Assembly: GCA_033442325.1 (NCBI GenBank)
Contig: JAWQFM010000002.1
Coordinates: forward strand, 395,841 to 459,840
Direction of reading: 5' to 3'
Source of the DNA: Salpingoeca rosetta
Lineage: Eukaryota > Protista > Choanoflagellata
Length of the DNA stretch: 64,000 nt
Part shown: piece by piece, positions 1 to 8,993 of the stretch
Layout: every line of letters begins with the position of its first letter
How positions within the stretch are numbered: position 1 is the first letter of the stretch
The notes under the pieces: generated by a model
Database searches by the model: none
The model's input: the letters and a program-made list of their open reading frames with translations, nothing else
What the model was told of the DNA's origin: nothing
Made by a program: the position numbers and the translations under genes

Positions 1-104
<104 letters not shown>

Positions 105-208: not shown

Positions 209-2513
209 CATGTCCAGGGCCAGCCAAGCGTGCTCCTTCTGTGCCGCTGGGCAGCGGACCCACAGATCAATGCACGTGTCGCTCACAATGCGGCCCAAGC
301 ACTCAGCAGAGGCCAGCAGGCCAAAGAACCCCGTCTGCCACAGGCTTGTGGTGTAATCCAAACACTGCACAATGCGCGACTGTACACGCGGGAACACGCC
401 AGGGGGGAAAATCATCCCGTGGTGTTGCGCAATCTGCAGGCGGCGGCCAGCAAACACTTCAACAGACCCATCTTCTCCCCACAGACGCTCTGGGCGCCAC
501 TCCAGCCGCGACAGCAGCATGAAAACGCGCTCATCACCGTCACCATCACTTCCGTGCATGGCGGCGTCCTCTTCGTAACACAGCAGCATGCTGCTCAGCA
601 CGTCCACCACGAGGTCTGGATCCAACACCCGCCCAAACACGCGCTGCATCTCCGAGAACACCACACGCCCTTCCGTTGCCCGCAAGTGGACGGGGAAGTG
701 GTCCGGTGCCAGCGCTGGGCCAACCACTTTGCTCAGCAGCCAGGAAGGGGAGACGAAGATCTGGTCGGCAAGCGATGGAATGGACTGGAACCACAGAACA
801 TCTCCACGCACGTGTAGGTAGCTGAATGAGGAGGCGGTGTGGGTATGGGGGATAGTGGTGAGCATTGGTCGTAGTAGGTGTTCGCACAGCGACCACACTC
901 ACACACACTCACACACTCACACCCACACCCACACCCACAAGCACACCCACAACACATACCACACATACACTCACACACATACACACACACACCTGAGCGC
1001 CTTGCAGAAGATGTCCTCGTTCAAGCCGGGAATGCGCGCCAACTCCCCCACGTGCTCGAGGAGGAACGAAAACAGCCGGTGCAATGCCCATGGGCCTTCA
1101 TCTTCCTTTCTGCACAATGCAAGCCCCTCGCCGATCAATTCCACCACTTTGGGCACTTGAATGTCTTGCTGCACGACCTCCAGCCACGCAGCGTGAAGCA
1201 AATCGCGCAAGTGATGCATGCAGGCACCGCCCAACTCGTGGCAATTGAGAGGAATCACGTGTGGATGGATGCGCATCGTGTCACCAAACCACTCCTGCAG
1301 CTGGCGGCTCTGCAACAGCGCGTCGCCACTCGGAAACTGCATTGGCGGCAAAGAGACGCCAGAAGCATGTGGTATAGCTTCTGCTGTCGTCTCCACCAGC
1401 GTGTTGTGCTCGAGTGGTTTGTCTGCCTTGGTGCCAACAATGAACACGTGCGGTGGATGCGGTGAACGGTGCACAGCTTGGTGCAGCCGCGTCTTGATGA
1501 AGCGAAGCCAGTACAGCACAGCCTCCTCCACGTTGGCCATGTCCTTGGACAAGTCCACGCACACGACGAAGACGGCGTTGTGGTCCGCAAACAGCAGCTC
1601 GTGCACCACGTGGTACTCCGTCTGCCCAGCGAAATCATACACCCGCAGCTTGCACGACGGGAGCGTTGTCTCGTGACCGGATGAGTCTTCGGTCCCTCCT
1701 GCTGCGCCAGCTGGCGATGGTGTGAGGGAGACGCTGCCAGATGACCCGCCTCTCTTGAGTGCGAAGTTGTGCATCTCAACGCCGGGAGTACGTTGATCTG
1801 GGCGGTCGGGCTCGTCGTACGTTTTGCGACGACGGCGCACCATGGTGTTAATGACATGTGGAGACGACTGCAGCGTGTTGATGAGGGTGGTTTTGCCGAT
1901 GCCATAGTGCCCGCATACAAACACCTTGGCTGTTGAGAGCGGAACAGAGCCGTGTTCGAGGAGGGCTTTCAATTCTTGCGTGCGGGAGGCAAGCTTCCGG
2001 TTTCGCTCAAGCGCAGACTTGATGCGAGCCATAAGCTTGTCCGGCACCCACTCGGTAAAACTAAATTCGAACCACAACTACAGTGAGAGAGTGGGAGTAA
2101 GAAGAGAGGACCAAGGTGAGAACAGGGATGGTCTGGAGTCTTAGGAGCAAGTGCTATCGACGACAACAACCCTAGAACGTGCTCGTCAACGCGTGCACAC
2201 GCCCCTCAGGATGCATAGAGCACCCACACGCGCAAAGGCGTCATAAGAACAGCTTCGTCAACTACAGCCCCGATGCGGAGACACAACCACACATACAGCT
2301 CACAGCAAACACCTCTTTGGCAGAGCACTGACACCTGCAGTCCAGCACAATATCACCCAAATCGAATACCCATGCACTTTGCCATTCCACACACTCATTG
2401 GACACTGCAGCCACCACATACAGTACATAACCTTGCGTCGTCGCAGCATTGGCGAGCTGAGTTGCCATTACGCATGTAAGGGTAAACCCAAGAAGCAAGA
2501 CATGGTACATTAG

Positions 2514-2583
<70 letters not shown>

Positions 2584-2858
2584 TCAGACAAATCCTATCT
2601 GAGTTTGCAGACGACAGCTAAGGTCCCAACAGAGCGGTATATTCCTACAACACACAAAAGACACTCCTGATGGTCTTTTTTAGATCTGTGCGCGAAGATA
2701 GTAGACTTTGAGACACCAAACGGATTAGCATTGGTACATCCGCTTTACTGCAGGACCTGGCATGAGAAGATGTCGCACTGTTTAAAGTGGGGTACAAAAT
2801 AGTCAAGCCTGGGTGACTATGCCGAATATCATCGGTGGGGATACCGTGATCTATAGTA

Positions 2859-2929
<71 letters not shown>

Positions 2930-5900
2930 GGAAGGGCAGTGGTTCAGTCGAGGAAGCTGAGAGAACATACTGCAATAATGAGCACAATTCATCACATCTA
3001 GACACTTCGTTTGTCTCTCCACGTTTCAAATAGCACTCAAACCGACACGAGCACTCTCGCAGCTCCATCATTGCAATACAAACAGCCGAGTACAAGAAAA
3101 AAGGAGAAAGAAAAGATGCCGCGAAGCTTATCATACACTAAGCCACCCGTCATACACACCCAAGCCAATACCAACCCCAGAACTTGAAGCGTTGTATTGA
3201 CTGTCAGTGCCTCCGCAAAGGCCACGGCGCTCTCAGCGTAGGCCAGGCTGCGTGGTGTGGTTGTGGAGTTGTCGTAATTGTGGTGCAAGTGACCCGCAGT
3301 CAATCGCATCATAACCGCACAAACACAAACACACAAGCATCCTCGCCCACTGCCCTCCCCGCAGCCTTCATACCCCTGTCAAATAACCGCAACTAGCAGC
3401 CACGCCTGATCCTGATACAACACAGAAGTACCACCGCCCCCTCTCCTCCCACACCACAACTGTCCTTATGACACGCGCAGAAAGCGCCTCAACGTAACAT
3501 GTCTCAGTCACCAACAATGCCTCGGTGCACACAAGCACCCACACTCACTAGAGCGTTGTCAGCGTCGTGTTGACCTTCAATGCCTCCGCGATCGCCTTCC
3601 TGCCTTCGGAGCCAACATTTGTCTCCCACAAGCTTCGTAGCATCGACGAGAATTGTGTGACACAACGTAAGTCTGTAACAGATATGGCAACAGCACATCA
3701 CCCTTTTCACGCAACGTGCAACGCAGATATTCATGTCCCCACGAAAACGACAAACACAGTCATGTCACACCCAAAACACAATGCATCCCATCGCCAAAGA
3801 CAAAAGTAATGCAGTGCAGGACAGCAACATGGAACACGCGCAAACATCACACACTTCAATGTTCCCACCACACAATTTTCAGTGCCATATCACATCAAAA
3901 ACGCGAGGCCACAGCACAGACACGCATACCATCGCACCAGGCGTTGGCAAGCCACCGCAATCCTGCGCGCAAGCTAAGACGATAAAACACAGTCAGCCAA
4001 CAATACCAACAAATTACATACCCCAGTAACACGAGCGTTGTGTTCACGTTCAGTGCCTCCGCAAAGGCCACGGCGCTTTCAGTTCCAACGTCGTCATTCC
4101 CCAGGCTGCGTGTGTTGTGATGGTTGTAGCGCATGTGGTACGCCGTTAGTCCACGCATCGCATAAAGTTCAAGAACGTTGCACCGCAATCATATCCAAAC
4201 CAGCATGCATAGTACACAGCACACGAGCCCGCAACACAGTAGCTACCATACAAGCCAGCAACCACGCCTGACGTGACAGAACGAATGCCGTCACACGCAT
4301 ACAGACACCACACACCACAACTATCCAAAATCATCACACACGTACGCACATGCAGGAAATGTAGCAGCACACCTCCTTTCAACACGACACAGCACAATGT
4401 GCCTCTGCAACACGAACGCACATTCACACAAAATCACATACATTCATACTCAGGCCCGCAATGAAACAACTCACTAGAGCTCCATCAGCGTCGTGTTCAC
4501 CTTCAGTGCCTCCGCAATTGCCTTCCCACCTTCAGGTCCAAGACCGCTCCACGCCAGGCTGCATGTGGTTGTGGTATTGTTGTGGTTTGTAGTGTGGGTG
4601 TGTGCAATCTTGAGTGCATGACACATGGCATCAGACAATCCACTACCTGAGCATCGAGCGGCAAATCCCTACCCTCAACATGCGTGTTCAAAACGAACAA
4701 CTACGTCACATCCAACACTTACACACACAACACACACCCACAAAGCACAACCCTCATAGTGTGACAACATCAACCAAACTCAATCTCAGGACCTCATCAC
4801 ACACAGCCACCACTGTGCGATGACCGCAGACCCATCACAACGTATATGCACGCGCGTGATATAAACTGGTATCCTTTCACGTCTATCAAAGCAGCACGTC
4901 ACTGCCTCATCCATACCAACCATCAGAAAACCAACCACTCACACCACATCAGCAGCACGATGTGCCTCTGCCACACAAACGCATATTCACACAAAATCAC
5001 ACACATTCATACTCAGGGCCGCAACGAAACAACTCACTAGAGCTCCGTCAGCGTCGTGTTGACCTTCAATGCCTCCGCAATTGCCTTCCCGCCTTCAGGT
5101 CCAACATGGTTGCCTACCAGGCTGCATGGTGTTGTAGAACAGGTTCATTGTGGTTTGTAGTGTGGGTGTGTGTGTGCGTGTGCGTGCGTGCGTGTGATGT
5201 GGTTATCGTGTATGGGTGTGCGTGTTTGTTTGGGTGTGTGAGTATGCACATCGCATGAATTAGCTACTGTAGCCTGTTCAAAATGACTACATGAAACTTA
5301 AGGCCGAAACTCAGCATGAGCCCATTCATGTTCATTTCTTGTCATCCGCTCCGTACTCACTTGACCTGGTCGCCACACGTGTTGTTCCAAATGATGAGGA
5401 TCTTTGCTTTGAGCAATTCATCTTCGACCTTCTCCAGATACTCCCTGAACAGCGCTTCATCTGCGACACCCTCCCGCACAGGCGGTGGCGTGTCACTCCA
5501 TTGCTGTTGCTGTTGAATCATCCCCTGTTCTCCTTCGTCGCTCGCCTCAACTTTCACCTTCTCATCTGCCTGCCTTTCATCTTCGTTGTCACGCACCTCT
5601 TCTGTGCCATCCACCTTCGTATTATCCTCATTTCCCATTTCGTTCTTGCGCCACGTCCTCGCCTTGCATGCTCGCCGGAACCTGGCAATCTCTGCTGGCT
5701 TCAACTTCCTTTCTCGCATCAGCATTCCCTCATGCAGCTGTCGCACGCCCTCTGTTGGCTTGGGTTCGCTGCCCTGCTGCCCTCGCTTTTGCTGTTGTTG
5801 TCGCCGTTTTGCAAGTGCACGCGTTCTCGGATTCCGCATGGCCTCTGTTGCCTGTTCCAGCTTGTGGAGACCTGTGATGTTATGCTTCTCAAGCACCAGC

Positions 5901-6505
5901 CCCATGGAGGACAGCATGTTGTAGCGCTGCAGCCACTGTGTCAGGTCAGCGTCCAGCGTGGTTGGTAGCTGCCGTGTGATGACGGAGGAGTGACCTTTGC
6001 CGCCCTTGCCGTCGCCGTTCGAAGTGCTGATGTGGTTGAGCTTGTCTGCAATGGCTGGGGCGAGATCATGTGGTAGGGACATGGATTCTGGATCGCTTGA
6101 AGCAGGGATCCATGGAAAGTAGGAGATGGAATCGGGAAGGTGGAACTGGGCGAACTCCTCCTCAAAGTCGTCACACATCTTGATGAAGAAGAACGGCTTC
6201 TGCCTTGCCGTGATGAAGCGCAGCTCCTCATAAGTGCTGAAGGTGGACGGCGTCTTCTTCCCGTAAGTTTTGGTGCCCATGATGACAGCCAAGTCACAGG
6301 CCGCGAGAGCCGTGATGATCTCTTCTTCCATATTGCCACCAGGCTTGACGTCACACAGGAACACGTCCAAGCCGTGCACCTGCTCCAGCTCACGCTTGAG
6401 CAGCTTGCCTGCATGCCCGGCCTCTCCAAACCGCAGCGAAATGAACACCTTCTTGCGACGGCTGCGTTGGGATGCCTTCTTCCGTACCGGCTTTGGTGAG
6501 CTCAT
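209..6505 (-). CDS. TIR-(SAM-like)-LRR-ROC-COR (Roco family) protein, multi-exon, 3' end beyond the window start
   Basis: Exon 6505-5361: TIR-like (KKVFISLRF...DVFLCD...CDLAVIMGTKTYG...STYEELRFI), then a SAM-like segment and NNTCGDQV. LRR exons 5121-5038, 4558-4475, 4105-4022, 3632-3549 (84 nt each) and 3247-3176/3172. Exon 2077-993: ROC GTPase (GHYGIGKTT, RTPGV, YDFAGQ, VGTKAD). Exon 821-209: COR-like (YLHVRGDVLWF...IFVSPSWLLSKVVG). GT-AG junctions were read directly. Confidence 0.85.
2516..2927. repeat. (CA)n microsatellite interrupted by a ~280 bp unique segment (about 2582-2861)
   Basis: Pure CA runs at 2516-2581 and 2862-2927 flank non-repetitive sequence inside the Roco intron. Confidence 0.9.
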
Positions 6506-6775
6506 CCTGGCAGGGAAAGAGGGAAGGCTGGGAGGGGAGGTGACTCTGGTCTTCTGGTGAGGGTGACTCCCTCCTCCGCAGGACAGCAGGCTAGCAGGAC
6601 CTCAGGACAGCACGTCGATCTCGATGTCTGTCTTCTCGTCGTCTGGTTGTTGTGGGGTGTGGCGCAAAGCAAAATAAATGTGGGCTTGCGAATTTTCATT
6701 GAAAATATGAACAAATACTCCACCTCAGGCCAAAACATAGTTCTTGTGTACAATTTCTGCCTCCGGCACCAAAAA

Positions 6776-6848
6776 GGGGCTGTAGCTCAAGTGGTAGAGC
6801 GCTCGCTTAGCATGCGAGAGGTACCGGGATCGATACCCGGCAGCTCCA
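6776..6848 (+). tRNA. tRNA-Ala (anticodon AGC)
   Basis: GGGGCTG acceptor stem pairs with CAGCTCC-A (G3:U70); D arm TAGCTCAAGTGGTAGAGC; anticodon arm CTCGC-TTAGCAT-GCGAG; T arm CCGGG-ATCGATA-CCCGG; 73 nt. Confidence 0.97.
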
Positions 6849-6855
6849 CGGTGAA

Positions 6856-6862: not shown

Positions 6863-7095
6863 CTGTCCACTCCGTTCACGTCGGGCAACACTCACGCTTG
6901 TCGCTGCGGTGTTGCGCCAAATGACATGGTGGTTTTCTTTTTGACGTGAAGGTTTACTGTGCAACGTCCACAAACACACAACTACCACAAATGCACCACG
7001 CAATACACACACGCACACACACACACATACGCACACACACACATACACACATACACACACACACACACACACACAACACACGCCCTTCCCCTTCA

Positions 7096-8993
<1,898 letters not shown>

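What the first reader, a model, noticed from the sequence alone, without database searches (positions are those of the whole stretch)
209..6505. TIR-SAM-like-LRR-ROC-COR receptor: candidate NADase-coupled immune sensor in a unicellular holozoan
Seen: one spliced reading frame joins a TIR-like domain, a SAM-like segment (DLTQWLQRYNML...ITGLHKL...KPAEIARFRRAC), an LRR N-cap (NNTCGDQVNL), RI-type LRRs, a ROC GTPase with all G motifs and a COR-like region. The TIR has Glu in STYEEL, at the position of the catalytic Glu (SxWCxxEL) of NAD+-cleaving TIRs such as SARM1, plant TNLs and ThsB. Known: Roco proteins such as LRRK2 and DAPK dimerise through ROC-COR. Inference: this is an NLR-like switch in which ROC-COR replaces NACHT/NB-ARC and drives TIR oligomerisation. 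I do not recognise this domain order from characterised proteins.
Basis: partly seen in the sequence, partly recalled or inferred. Interest (0 to 1): 0.8.

Follow-up and report, generated by a model that had tools for sequence, protein, structure and literature searches.

The report
Choanoflagellate TIR-SAM-LRR-Roc-COR receptor-like gene
This is a real, spliced and transcribed gene of the choanoflagellate Salpingoeca rosetta that puts a TIR domain, a SAM-like helical domain, five leucine-rich repeats and a Roc-COR GTPase in one protein; it looks like an immune-type receptor, but no function has been tested.

Summary
On the minus strand, nine GT..AG exons (6505 to 209) give an open 1092-aa frame. 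RNA contigs and reads confirm the joints 5361|5121, 4022|3632, 3549|3247, 3176|2456 and 2432|2077.
- A 25-nt micro-exon (2456-2432) lies between the last LRR exon and the Roc exon.
- The last COR exon lies left of the window, in unreadable N.

Domain identities:
- **TIR:** firm. VIA-align Z is 12-14 to TIR structures only, and the profile hits only Roq1, SARM1 and RUN1. A Glu (E94) conserved in at least 90% of relatives opens helix C.
- **SAM-like:** rests on predicted fold only (Z 7.2).
- **Roc:** passes Pfam.
- **COR:** below threshold but conserved.

The gene is one of at least 7 paralogs with this order in S. rosetta. LRR exon numbers vary among them, and the TIR is under purifying selection (dN/dS 0.08-0.22). 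The public model of this gene is mis-built.

The NLR-like mechanism is inference. TIR+Roco fusions are already noted in mollusc and Roco surveys, and a 2026 preprint shows cADPR synthesis by another S. rosetta TIR that lies next to a Roc P-loop. This scan has already flagged paralogs of this gene on other DNA of the same genome.

The parts
5361..6505 (-). Exon 1 (381 codons plus 2 nt). ATG at 6505, donor GT at 5360-5359.
   Evidence: Open frame. It is the first in-frame ATG after a stop at 6602-6604. Joint 5361|5121 is seen in RNA. Paralogs start at the same Met.
6011..6451 (-). TIR domain, aa 19-165.
   Evidence: Pfam TIR_2 E 4e-4, 21.3 bits, below the cut-off of 28. Atlas: 10/10 top families are TIR_2. 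Family profile against the PDB hits only Roq1, SARM1, RPV1 and RUN1. AF2 pLDDT is 89-98 over the domain. Foldseek and VIA-align top 50 are all TIR, Z 11.6-14.2.
6224..6226 (-). Codon of Glu94 (in STYEEL), the candidate catalytic Glu at the start of helix C.
   Evidence: At least 90% conserved in 88 family members; E28 is invariant. Helix 91-100 in the model. Residue-level equivalence to SARM1 E642 / Roq1 E86 is not shown.
5642..5956 (-). SAM-like helical domain, aa 184-288, with a disordered basic/Gln insert (about aa 243-258).
   Evidence: AF2 pLDDT 72. In the VIA-align wide search, 21 of the top 24 chains are SAM domains, Z 7.2-5.2, rmsd 2.2-2.7 over 60-66 residues. No Pfam, PDB-profile or Foldseek hit. 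Found only in the seven TIR-Roco paralogs.
5474..5641 (-). Acidic, low-complexity linker, aa 289-344.
   Evidence: Composition read from the sequence. Fast-evolving among paralogs, dN/dS 0.25-1.0.
5361..5473 (-). Conserved helix plus the IWNNT motif before the first LRR (LRR N-terminal cap), aa 345-381.
   Evidence: I369, L370, I372, W373, N374, N375 and T376 are invariant in four paralogs.
5038..5121 (-). LRR exon 1 (84 nt, phase 2).
   Evidence: Pfam LRR_6 E 2.9e-4. Joint to exon 1 seen in RNA.
4475..4558 (-). LRR exon 2 (84 nt, phase 2). Its use in mRNA is not shown.
   Evidence: AG/GT sites and frame. LRR_6 E 0.021. The only contig here runs unspliced across the acceptor (record 5).
4022..4105 (-). 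LRR exon 3 (84 nt, phase 2).
   Evidence: Joint 4022|3632 in an RNA contig of depth 15.
3549..3632 (-). LRR exon 4 (84 nt, phase 2).
   Evidence: Joints 4022|3632 and 3549|3247.
3176..3247 (-). LRR exon 5 (72 nt, shortened repeat).
   Evidence: Joints 3549|3247 and 3176|2456.
2432..2456 (-).
   Evidence: Joints 3176|2456 and 2432|2077 in one 504-nt RNA contig, plus one raw read. It restores the frame.
993..2077 (-). Exon carrying the LRR C-terminal linker, the Roc GTPase (about aa 571-815) and the start of COR-A.
   Evidence: Pfam Roc 38.5 bits, above the cut-off of 27, E 1.6e-9. The best PDB matches are all LRRK2 Roc, E 1.2e-5, aligning the P-loop and DFAGQ. G1 at 1889-1912, G3 at 1622-1636, G4 at 1421-1432.
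209..821 (-). COR exon (rest of COR-A, start of COR-B). Donor GT at 208-207.
   Evidence: COR-A E 4.5e-4 (20.6 bits, below 35.3) and COR-B E 0.095. 93%, 88% and 63% identical to paralog COR exons. The terminal exon is unreadable.

Best explanation
**Shown.** One S. rosetta gene encodes a cytosolic protein with no signal peptide. Its order is TIR, SAM-like domain, acidic linker, five 28-residue RI/NLR-type LRRs (one per phase-2 exon), a Roc GTPase with G1, G3 (DFAGQ) and G4 motifs, and COR. It is transcribed at a low level from the minus strand and spliced as modelled. It belongs to a family of at least 7 paralogs in this genome. LRR exon number varies among them, while TIR, SAM-like and Roc are under purifying selection.

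**Inferred.** It works as a receptor-switch:
1. The LRR arc binds a ligand or holds the protein closed.
2. The Roc-COR module, which dimerises in known Roco proteins, changes nucleotide state or conformation.
3. This brings the N-terminal TIR domains together, helped by the SAM-like domain.
4. The TIRs then cleave NAD+ (ADPR/cADPR-type products) through the conserved Glu94.

This is the logic of a TIR-NLR with a Roco GTPase in the place of the STAND ATPase.
For: **Gene and transcript:**

**TIR fold and enzyme-type relatives:**
- only Roq1 (E 2.6e-4), SARM1, RPV1 and RUN1 are hit.
- top hits are RPPT, RPP1, SARM1 and AbTir.
- Z 14.2-11.6; SARM1 561-700 aligns to model residues 17-157.
- The FISxR strand A motif aligns to SARM1 FISYRR and Roq1 FLSFRG.
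- E94 is at least 90% conserved and sits at the start of helix C.

**Other domains:**
- SAM fold, including SARM1 and TIR-1 SAMs.
- Roc.
- COR.

**Family expansion:**
- Conserved order at C2, C17, C19 (twice), C29, C1 and C26.
- Variable LRR exon counts.
- dN/dS for TIR is 0.08-0.22 at dS 0.4-0.6.

**Precedent in the same organism:** the TIR of F2UB80 makes cADPR in a Glu-dependent way (10.64898/2026.04.20.719644). Its exon is at C13, 2.5 kb 3' of a Roc P-loop on the same strand.
Against: - No assay exists for this TIR subfamily.
- The window's TIR scores under Pfam's cut-off.
- The Glu equivalence is not shown residue by residue. An ungapped continuation of the Roq1 alignment would put Ser90, not Glu, opposite E86, so a 4-residue loop insertion must be assumed.
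- A profile comparison with the validated S. rosetta TIR class was uninformative.
- The SAM-like call rests on a medium-confidence model and a middling Z.
- COR is below threshold and its last exon is unread.
- Only five LRRs make a small sensing surface.
- Expression is very low in the three RNA runs (depth about 0-5).
- Roco proteins of Dictyostelium and animals mostly act in cytoskeletal, developmental or kinase signalling, not as NLR analogues.
Confidence: 0.5

Rival explanations
1. The architecture is the same, but the TIR is a non-catalytic adaptor. The protein signals by TIR-TIR contacts with some of the 30 or more other proteins of the same TIR subfamily in this genome, as TLR/MyD88-type TIRs do. 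These other proteins carry ARM, ankyrin, WD40, PDZ, helicase or Ras-like modules.
For: - At least 31 loci in the genome carry this TIR subfamily.
- Relatives have diverse partner domains.
- The best single VIA-align match is a Toll-related receptor TIR from Hydra. MAL, MyD88 and IL-1R family TIRs are also at Z 12-13.
- The catalytic equivalence of Glu94 is unproven.
Against: - Sequence-profile matches go only to enzyme-type TIRs: Roq1, SARM1, RPV1 and RUN1.
- Glu94 is nearly invariant across the subfamily.
- The 2026 preprint reports that many TIRs once taken for adaptors are catalytic.
Confidence: 0.25
2. It is a Roco signalling protein with a non-defence role. Examples would be sensing bacterial cues that steer S. 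rosetta feeding, rosette development or mating, or regulating the cytoskeleton. In this reading the TIR tunes NAD+/cADPR second messengers rather than killing or arresting the cell.
For: - Known Roco proteins (LRRK2, DAPK1, Dictyostelium Rocos) act in such pathways (established knowledge; PMC11378527).
- Most catalytic eukaryotic TIRs in the 2026 preprint made cADPR without depleting NAD+.
- Expression is low and constitutive in unchallenged cultures.
Against: Lineage-specific expansion and variable one-repeat-per-exon LRR cassettes are hallmarks of recognition receptors (brown-algal parallel in PMC11378527). Nothing here ties the gene to development.
Confidence: 0.17
3. It is an annotation artefact or a decaying copy. 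Either the TIR exon and the Roc-COR exons belong to separate genes, or this copy is a pseudogene truncated at its 3' end.
For: - The terminal exon cannot be read.
- The public model runs from COR into a neighbouring t6A-synthase gene.
- The LRR1>LRR2>LRR3 joints were not observed, and one contig is unspliced there.
Against: - The 1092-aa frame is open with nine canonical exons.
- RNA joints link exon 1 to LRR1 and LRR3 through to Roc.
- 40 of 50 X13 reads match at 99% or more.
- dN/dS is far below 1.
- The same order occurs in six other loci.
Confidence: 0.05

Closest known systems
S. rosetta paralogs PTSG_12838 (F2UM66), PTSG_12575, PTSG_07288 and PTSG_08667 (F2UKC0), and the public model of this very gene (P0170, 'hypothetical protein, variant')
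   Same: They have the same order: TIR, SAM-like, LRR, Roc, COR. Overall identity to my model is 92% (P0170), 76%, 74%, 47% and 39%.
   Different: None has been studied. The public model of this gene has three faults: it has a chimeric LRR1/LRR4 repeat instead of LRR1-4, it uses intron-derived filler instead of the micro-exon, and it is fused at its 3' end to a t6A synthase (PF00814). UniRef names it after that synthase.
S. rosetta proteins with a Roc P-loop followed by a C-terminal TIR, e.g. F2UB80, whose TIR makes cADPR (bioRxiv 10.64898/2026.04.20.719644)
   Same: They are from the same organism and combine a Roc-type P-loop and a TIR in one locus. The catalytic Glu is experimentally required for F2UB80. 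Its TIR exon is 100% identical to C13:~1706000-1706650, with a Roc hit 2.5 kb upstream.
   Different: The order is reversed, with the TIR at the C-terminus, and the TIR belongs to a different subfamily (LLEW motif). No meaningful profile match to this one was found. Only the isolated TIR was tested.
Plant TIR-NLRs (Roq1, RPP1) and SARM1
   Same: The TIR fold and strand A motif match, and the N-terminal TIR plus a nucleotide switch plus LRR gives the same logic as TNLs. The pairing of TIR with SAM domains resembles SARM1/TIR-1.
   Different: The switch is a Roc-COR GTPase, not NB-ARC. Pfam NACHT matches only the P-loop, at 15.6 bits. The SAM-like domain is single, follows the TIR and carries an insert. 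There is no ARM domain.
Roco proteins: LRRK2, C. tepidum Roco, brown-algal LRR-Roco candidate receptors; Aplysia 'TLRs'/MyD88-like proteins with ROC-COR
   Same: They share the LRR-Roc-COR core. The best PDB sequence matches are LRRK2 Roc. One LRR per phase-2 exon is the same as in brown-algal ROCOs (PMC11378527). TIR+LRR+ROC+COR is listed in Aplysia (PMC9334734).
   Different: There is no kinase. The LRRs are 28-residue RI/NLR-type on 84-nt exons, against 24-residue repeats on 72-nt exons in brown algae. The N-terminal TIR-SAM-like module is not described in those papers.

Membership tests
TIR domain superfamily | Five-stranded parallel sheet with five helices (flavodoxin-like TIR fold) | tested here: met
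   The AF2 model has pLDDT 89-98 over aa 19-165 with the order bA-aA-bB-aB-bC-aC-bD-aD-bE-aE. The VIA-align top 50 are all TIR, Z 14.2-11.6, with 121-140 residues aligned. Foldseek gives TM 0.57-0.66 normalised to the target.
TIR domain superfamily | Sequence-profile membership (Pfam TIR_2 gathering score of 28 bits) | tested here: inconclusive
   The window scores 21.3 bits, E 4e-4. Relatives of the same subfamily pass: P0143 at 28.8 bits and the C29 paralog at 29.9 bits. The subfamily profile hits only TIR chains in the PDB.
Catalytic (NADase) TIRs | Glutamate in helix C at the position of SARM1 E642 or plant E86/E100 | tested here: inconclusive
   E94 is at least 90% conserved and lies in the first turn of helix C. 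The HMM alignment to Roq1 stops 5 residues before its Glu. hhalign against the validated S. rosetta class gives probability 2.8%. No superposition was available.
Catalytic (NADase) TIRs | NAD+ cleavage or cADPR-isomer production abolished by Glu mutation | not testable with these tools
   This needs an enzyme assay.
SAM domain | Compact five-helix bundle of about 65-70 residues | tested here: inconclusive
   The predicted fold matches SAM domains (p73 Z 7.2, EphA1 7.0, tankyrase 6.3, SARM1 6.0), covering 60-66 of 61-69 target residues. The model pLDDT is 72, Z is under 8, and Foldseek finds nothing.
SAM domain | Sequence-profile match to SAM families | tested here: not met
   No Pfam hit at E up to 10. 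No SAM hit with the profile against the PDB. Atlas features score 0.82-0.84 for SAM clusters, below the 0.9 lead level. I therefore call it SAM-like, not SAM.
Roco family | Roc GTPase domain with G motifs | tested here: met
   Pfam Roc scores 38.5 bits, above 27. LRRK2 Roc chains are the top PDB hits. G1 GHYGIGKT, G3 DFAGQ and G4 TKAD are present. The G2 and G5 assignments are tentative.
Roco family | COR domain directly C-terminal of Roc | tested here: inconclusive
   COR-A scores E 4.5e-4 at 20.6 bits, below the cut-off of 35.3, and COR-B scores E 0.095. Paralogs give similar sub-threshold COR-A hits and are named COR-domain proteins by UniRef. The last exon is unreadable.
Roco family | COR-mediated dimerisation and GTP binding/hydrolysis | not testable with these tools
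   This needs biochemistry.
NLR / STAND receptors | NACHT or NB-ARC ATPase between effector domain and repeats | tested here: not met
   Only a P-loop-length NACHT match was found (15.6 bits, residues 52-70 of the exon). The NTPase is Roc. It is an analogue of an NLR, not a member.
RI/NLR-type leucine-rich repeats (Pfam LRR_6) | Tandem 28-29-residue repeats with the LxxLxLxxNxIGxxGAxxLAxAL pattern | tested here: met
   There are five tandem repeats of 28 (the last 24) residues. Single exons give LRR_6 E 2.9e-4, 0.021 and 0.15. The paralog P0001 gives LRR_6 E 4.3e-13.

The most novel reading that the evidence does not exclude
Choanoflagellates, the sister group of animals, built their own intracellular TIR receptors on a Roco GTPase instead of a STAND ATPase, and did so in two orientations: TIR-SAM-LRR-Roc-COR, as here, and Roc...TIR. 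In this reading GTP-state-controlled COR dimers and SAM-like contacts assemble TIR NADase sites. That would be a third, independent invention of 'effector-NTPase-LRR' immunity and a new way of gating TIR enzymes.
Probability: 0.3. Interest if true: 0.75.

Novelty: new variant of a known kind. Interest (0 to 1): 0.55.

Why it matters
**Possible NLR counterpart.** Richter et al. 2018 report that choanoflagellates lack the NLR family. A family of TIR-Roco proteins with variable LRR cassettes could be their functional counterpart.

**Link to known TIR chemistry.** If so, it would tie Roco GTPases, the LRRK2 family, to TIR/NAD+ signalling seen in bacteria, plants and SARM1.

**Testability.** S. rosetta is genetically tractable, so the idea can be tested.

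**Annotation.**
- The public model of this gene is wrong and hides its nature.
- The TIR subfamily is large: 799 cluster representatives, and at least 31 loci in this genome.
- It mostly scores under Pfam's TIR_2 cut-off, so domain-based TIR censuses probably miss it.

Tried and rejected
- **Complex prediction** on two copies of the TIR (aa 15-170): no verdict. It is not evidence either way.
- **Residue-level mapping of Glu94:**
  - hhalign of the subfamily (A3) against 15 S. rosetta TIRs of the experimentally validated class (A5) gave probability 2.8%.
  - phmmer of relative P0143 against the PDB gave nothing useful.
- **SAM-like domain by sequence:** no Pfam hit, no PDB-profile hit, no Foldseek hit, and Atlas features below 0.9.
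- **Reading the 3' end:** G000:C2:388403-395840 is all N. The terminal exon of paralogs finds no copy on C2.
- **** used a query one base out of frame, which was my slip. It was redone. One search failed for the same reason and was redone.
- **dN/dS for C19b in the Roc exon** is invalid because my coordinates were out of frame. Those rows are ignored.
- **The COR-exon dN/dS** planned was not computed. The script only printed the translations, and my C19a coordinates were out of frame.
- **The 2026 preprint's supplements:** I looked for F2UM66, F2UKC0 and two relatives and found none. The files are stored cut, so this does not show absence.
- **Orthologues outside S. rosetta:**
  - A word search with the Roc-COR half of P0001 returned only five S. 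rosetta proteins.
  - Among the best 150 TIR-profile hits, only the two S. rosetta paralogs carry the SAM-like domain or Roc-COR.
  - Only 8000 candidates were scored and only 150 of 799 hits listed, so absence elsewhere is not shown.
It only skipped simple repeats (889-997, 2508-2590, 2852-2939).

Full report
**Where and what.** The window is G000:C2:395841-459840 of a 55.4-Mb, 68-contig genome. The gene's exon 1, Roc and COR translations read the same as the NCBI protein P0170 of Salpingoeca rosetta over those segments. Four paralogous S. rosetta proteins also match. The organism is therefore S. rosetta.

**Gene model.** Six-frame reading of the minus strand and a script give nine exons:
- 6505-5361
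- 5121-5038
- 4558-4475
- 4105-4022
- 3632-3549
- 3247-3176
- 2456-2432
- 2077-993
- 821-209

All introns are GT..AG. The frame is 1092 codons and has no stop. The five LRR exons all start in phase 2. Four are 84 nt and the last is 72 nt.

**RNA evidence.** I laid 5,996 bases (625-6620) against three stranded RNA-seq runs and one contig set.
- Reads lie almost only with the first mate on +, as expected for a minus-strand mRNA in a typical stranded library.
- Depth is low, about 0-5. In X13, 40 of 50 reads match at 99% or more. In X12 and X14 most reads are 95-99% alike, so they are probably from paralogs.
- The joints seen are 5361|5121, 4022|3632, 3549|3247, 3176|2456 and 2432|2077.
- One 504-nt contig runs Roc, micro-exon, LRR5, LRR4.
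- The 3172/3176>2077 junction is wrong in one respect: a 25-nt micro-exon lies between, and the donor is 3176.
- The joints LRR1>LRR2>LRR3 were not seen. One low-depth contig (4532-4682) is unspliced across the LRR2 acceptor. Because all cassettes are in phase, skipping LRR2 would keep the frame.

**3' end.**
- Position 209 is a donor (ATG|GTGAGC), not a stop.
- Six paralogs have one more exon of about 90 aa some 230 nt downstream. At least the C29 copy ends in a stop.
- For this copy that place is left of the window, where C2:388403-395840 reads N.
- The public model jumps from COR into a t6A-synthase gene.

**TIR.**
- Pfam gives only a sub-threshold TIR_2 hit (21.3 bits).
- A profile of four paralogs found 799 cluster representatives: 480 at E up to 1e-10 and 127 at E up to 1e-30.
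- These define a conserved subfamily with the consensus FISLRF.EA ... PG.DI ... GT.TYG..T...FSTFEELRFI ... KMCD.
- Members combine with ARM, ankyrin, WD40, PDZ, ZZ, a SecA-like helicase, a Ras-like GTPase or extracellular NHL/LamG modules.
- One relative passes Pfam TIR and TIR_2.
- The 88-sequence profile hits only TIR chains in the PDB: Roq1 at 2.6e-4, then SARM1, RPV1 and RUN1. FISxRF aligns to FLSFRG and FISYRR.
- The AF2 model has pLDDT 85 overall and 89-98 in the domain.
- Foldseek puts RPPT, RPP1, SARM1 and AbTir first.
- VIA-align gives Z 14.2-11.6, TIR only, with SARM1 561-700 aligned to residues 17-157.
- Atlas features give 10 of 10 TIR_2.
- Glu94 is at least 90% conserved and opens helix C (91-100). 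Glu93 is not conserved, since one paralog has Gln there.
- I could not show residue-level equivalence to the catalytic Glu.

**SAM-like domain.**
- Residues 184-288 are conserved in all seven paralogs around a variable basic/Gln insert. The C1 copy lacks much of the middle of the domain, including the insert, and is about 75 residues long.
- Sequence methods find nothing.
- The AF2 model (pLDDT 72) matches SAM domains in an all-against-representatives search. The hits include p73, EphA1/A2, tankyrase, CASKIN2, SARM1 and TIR-1. Z is 7.2-5.2, and 60-66 residues cover whole SAM domains.
- Foldseek finds nothing.
- I call it SAM-like on fold prediction only.

**LRR, Roc and COR.**
- The repeats are 28-residue RI/NLR-type (weak LRR_6 per exon; 4e-13 in the paralog P0001).
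- Roc passes Pfam, and its best PDB relatives are LRRK2 Roc.
- G1, G3 (with Gln) and G4 are present. A low-complexity insert of roughly 35 aa sits between switch I and strand 3.
- COR-A and COR-B are below threshold but 63-93% conserved among the four closest copies, and down to 51% in the C1 and C26 copies.

**Family and selection.**
- The genome holds at least 31 loci of this TIR subfamily and at least 20 COR loci.
- TIR, Roc or COR, and the terminal exon are co-linear at C2, C17, C19 (twice), C29, C1 and C26.
- LRR exon counts differ between copies.
- Among the four close copies, dN/dS is 0.08-0.22 for TIR, 0.19-0.40 for SAM-like and about 0.25 for Roc, at dS 0.4-0.6. The acidic linker is nearly neutral.

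**Context in the same genome.**
- Canonical TIR_2 hits lie 2.5-3 kb 3' of Roc P-loop hits on the same strand at 12 or more loci.
- One of them, on C13, encodes a stretch identical to the F2UB80 TIR fragment that produced cADPR in E. coli. That paper reports that a catalytic-Glu point mutation abolished cADPR production in all cases tested (10.64898/2026.04.20.719644).
- Earlier notes of this scan describe that reversed class and further TIR-SAM-LRR-Roc-COR copies on other DNA of the same genome.

**Literature.**
- TIR+LRR+ROC+COR proteins are listed for Aplysia (PMC9334734).
- A Roco survey mentions N-terminal TIR and TPR-ROCO-TIR, and describes one-LRR-per-phase-2-exon ROCO candidate receptors in brown algae (PMC11378527).
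- Richter et al. 2018 list TIR partners in choanoflagellates without Roc and report that they did not detect the LRR-containing NLR family there.
- In the held library only the 2026 preprint holds choanoflagellate, Roc, COR, TIR and LRR together, and only in a figure legend.

**Verdict.**
- The architecture is real, expressed and conserved.
- The NLR-like, NADase-coupled mechanism is a reasonable but untested inference.
- It is a new variant of known kinds (Roco proteins and TIR-NTPase-LRR receptors), not a categorically new system.
- Its relatives were already flagged by this scan.

Noticed in passing
window 6776-6849 (+): There is a tRNA-Ala (AGC) gene 270 bp upstream of the gene's ATG, on the opposite strand. 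The same tRNA-like translation (…AVAQVVERSLSMREVPGSIPGSS…) also appears about 0.7 kb downstream of the C19a paralog.
   Followed up: partly
G000:C2:388403-395840 (left of window base 1): A 7,438-base block reads N and ends exactly at the window start. It hides the gene's terminal exon. Judging from the public fused model P0170, it also hides a t6A-synthase (PF00814) gene.
   Followed up: partly
window 209-6505 versus protein P0170: The public S. rosetta model of this gene is mis-built. It has a chimeric LRR1/LRR4 repeat, which suggests repeat collapse in the older assembly. It uses intron-derived filler instead of the 25-nt micro-exon. It is fused at its 3' end to the neighbouring gene.
   Followed up: yes
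G000:C13:1706000-1709300 and at least 11 similar loci (C23, C4 x2, C29, C14, C26, C36, C28, C30, C1, C8): A Roc P-loop hit lies 2.5-3 kb 5' of a canonical TIR_2 exon on the same strand. The C13 TIR exon is identical to the F2UB80 fragment shown to make cADPR. This is a second, reversed Roco-TIR class.
   Followed up: partly
window 4532-4682 and the joints 4742>3318 and 4742>4292: An unspliced RNA contig crosses the LRR2 acceptor. A few reads 'go back' between the duplicated LRR introns with CA-rich letters in between. This could be intron retention, cassette skipping or repeat mis-laying; which one is undecided.
   Followed up: no
window 1-100, 889-997, 2515-2580, 2870-2930, 6990-7060: Long (CA)n/(GT)n microsatellites sit inside most introns and flanks of the gene. 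The 171-nt Roc>COR intron is almost entirely GT-rich repeat.
   Followed up: no
window 7096-7977 (-): The next ORF upstream encodes an Arg/Ser/Asp/Lys-rich protein tail preceded by '...LAGRTLRVDHVRDYEAPE...'. It looks like the end of an RRM splicing-factor gene.
   Followed up: no
proteins P0007, P0051, P0076, P0118 (relatives, not in the window): The same TIR subfamily is fused elsewhere to several other modules: a SecA/DEAD-like helicase (S. rosetta PTSG_06287), an NHL-LamG extracellular receptor, a Ras-like GTPase, and a 10-blade WD40 array.
   Followed up: partly
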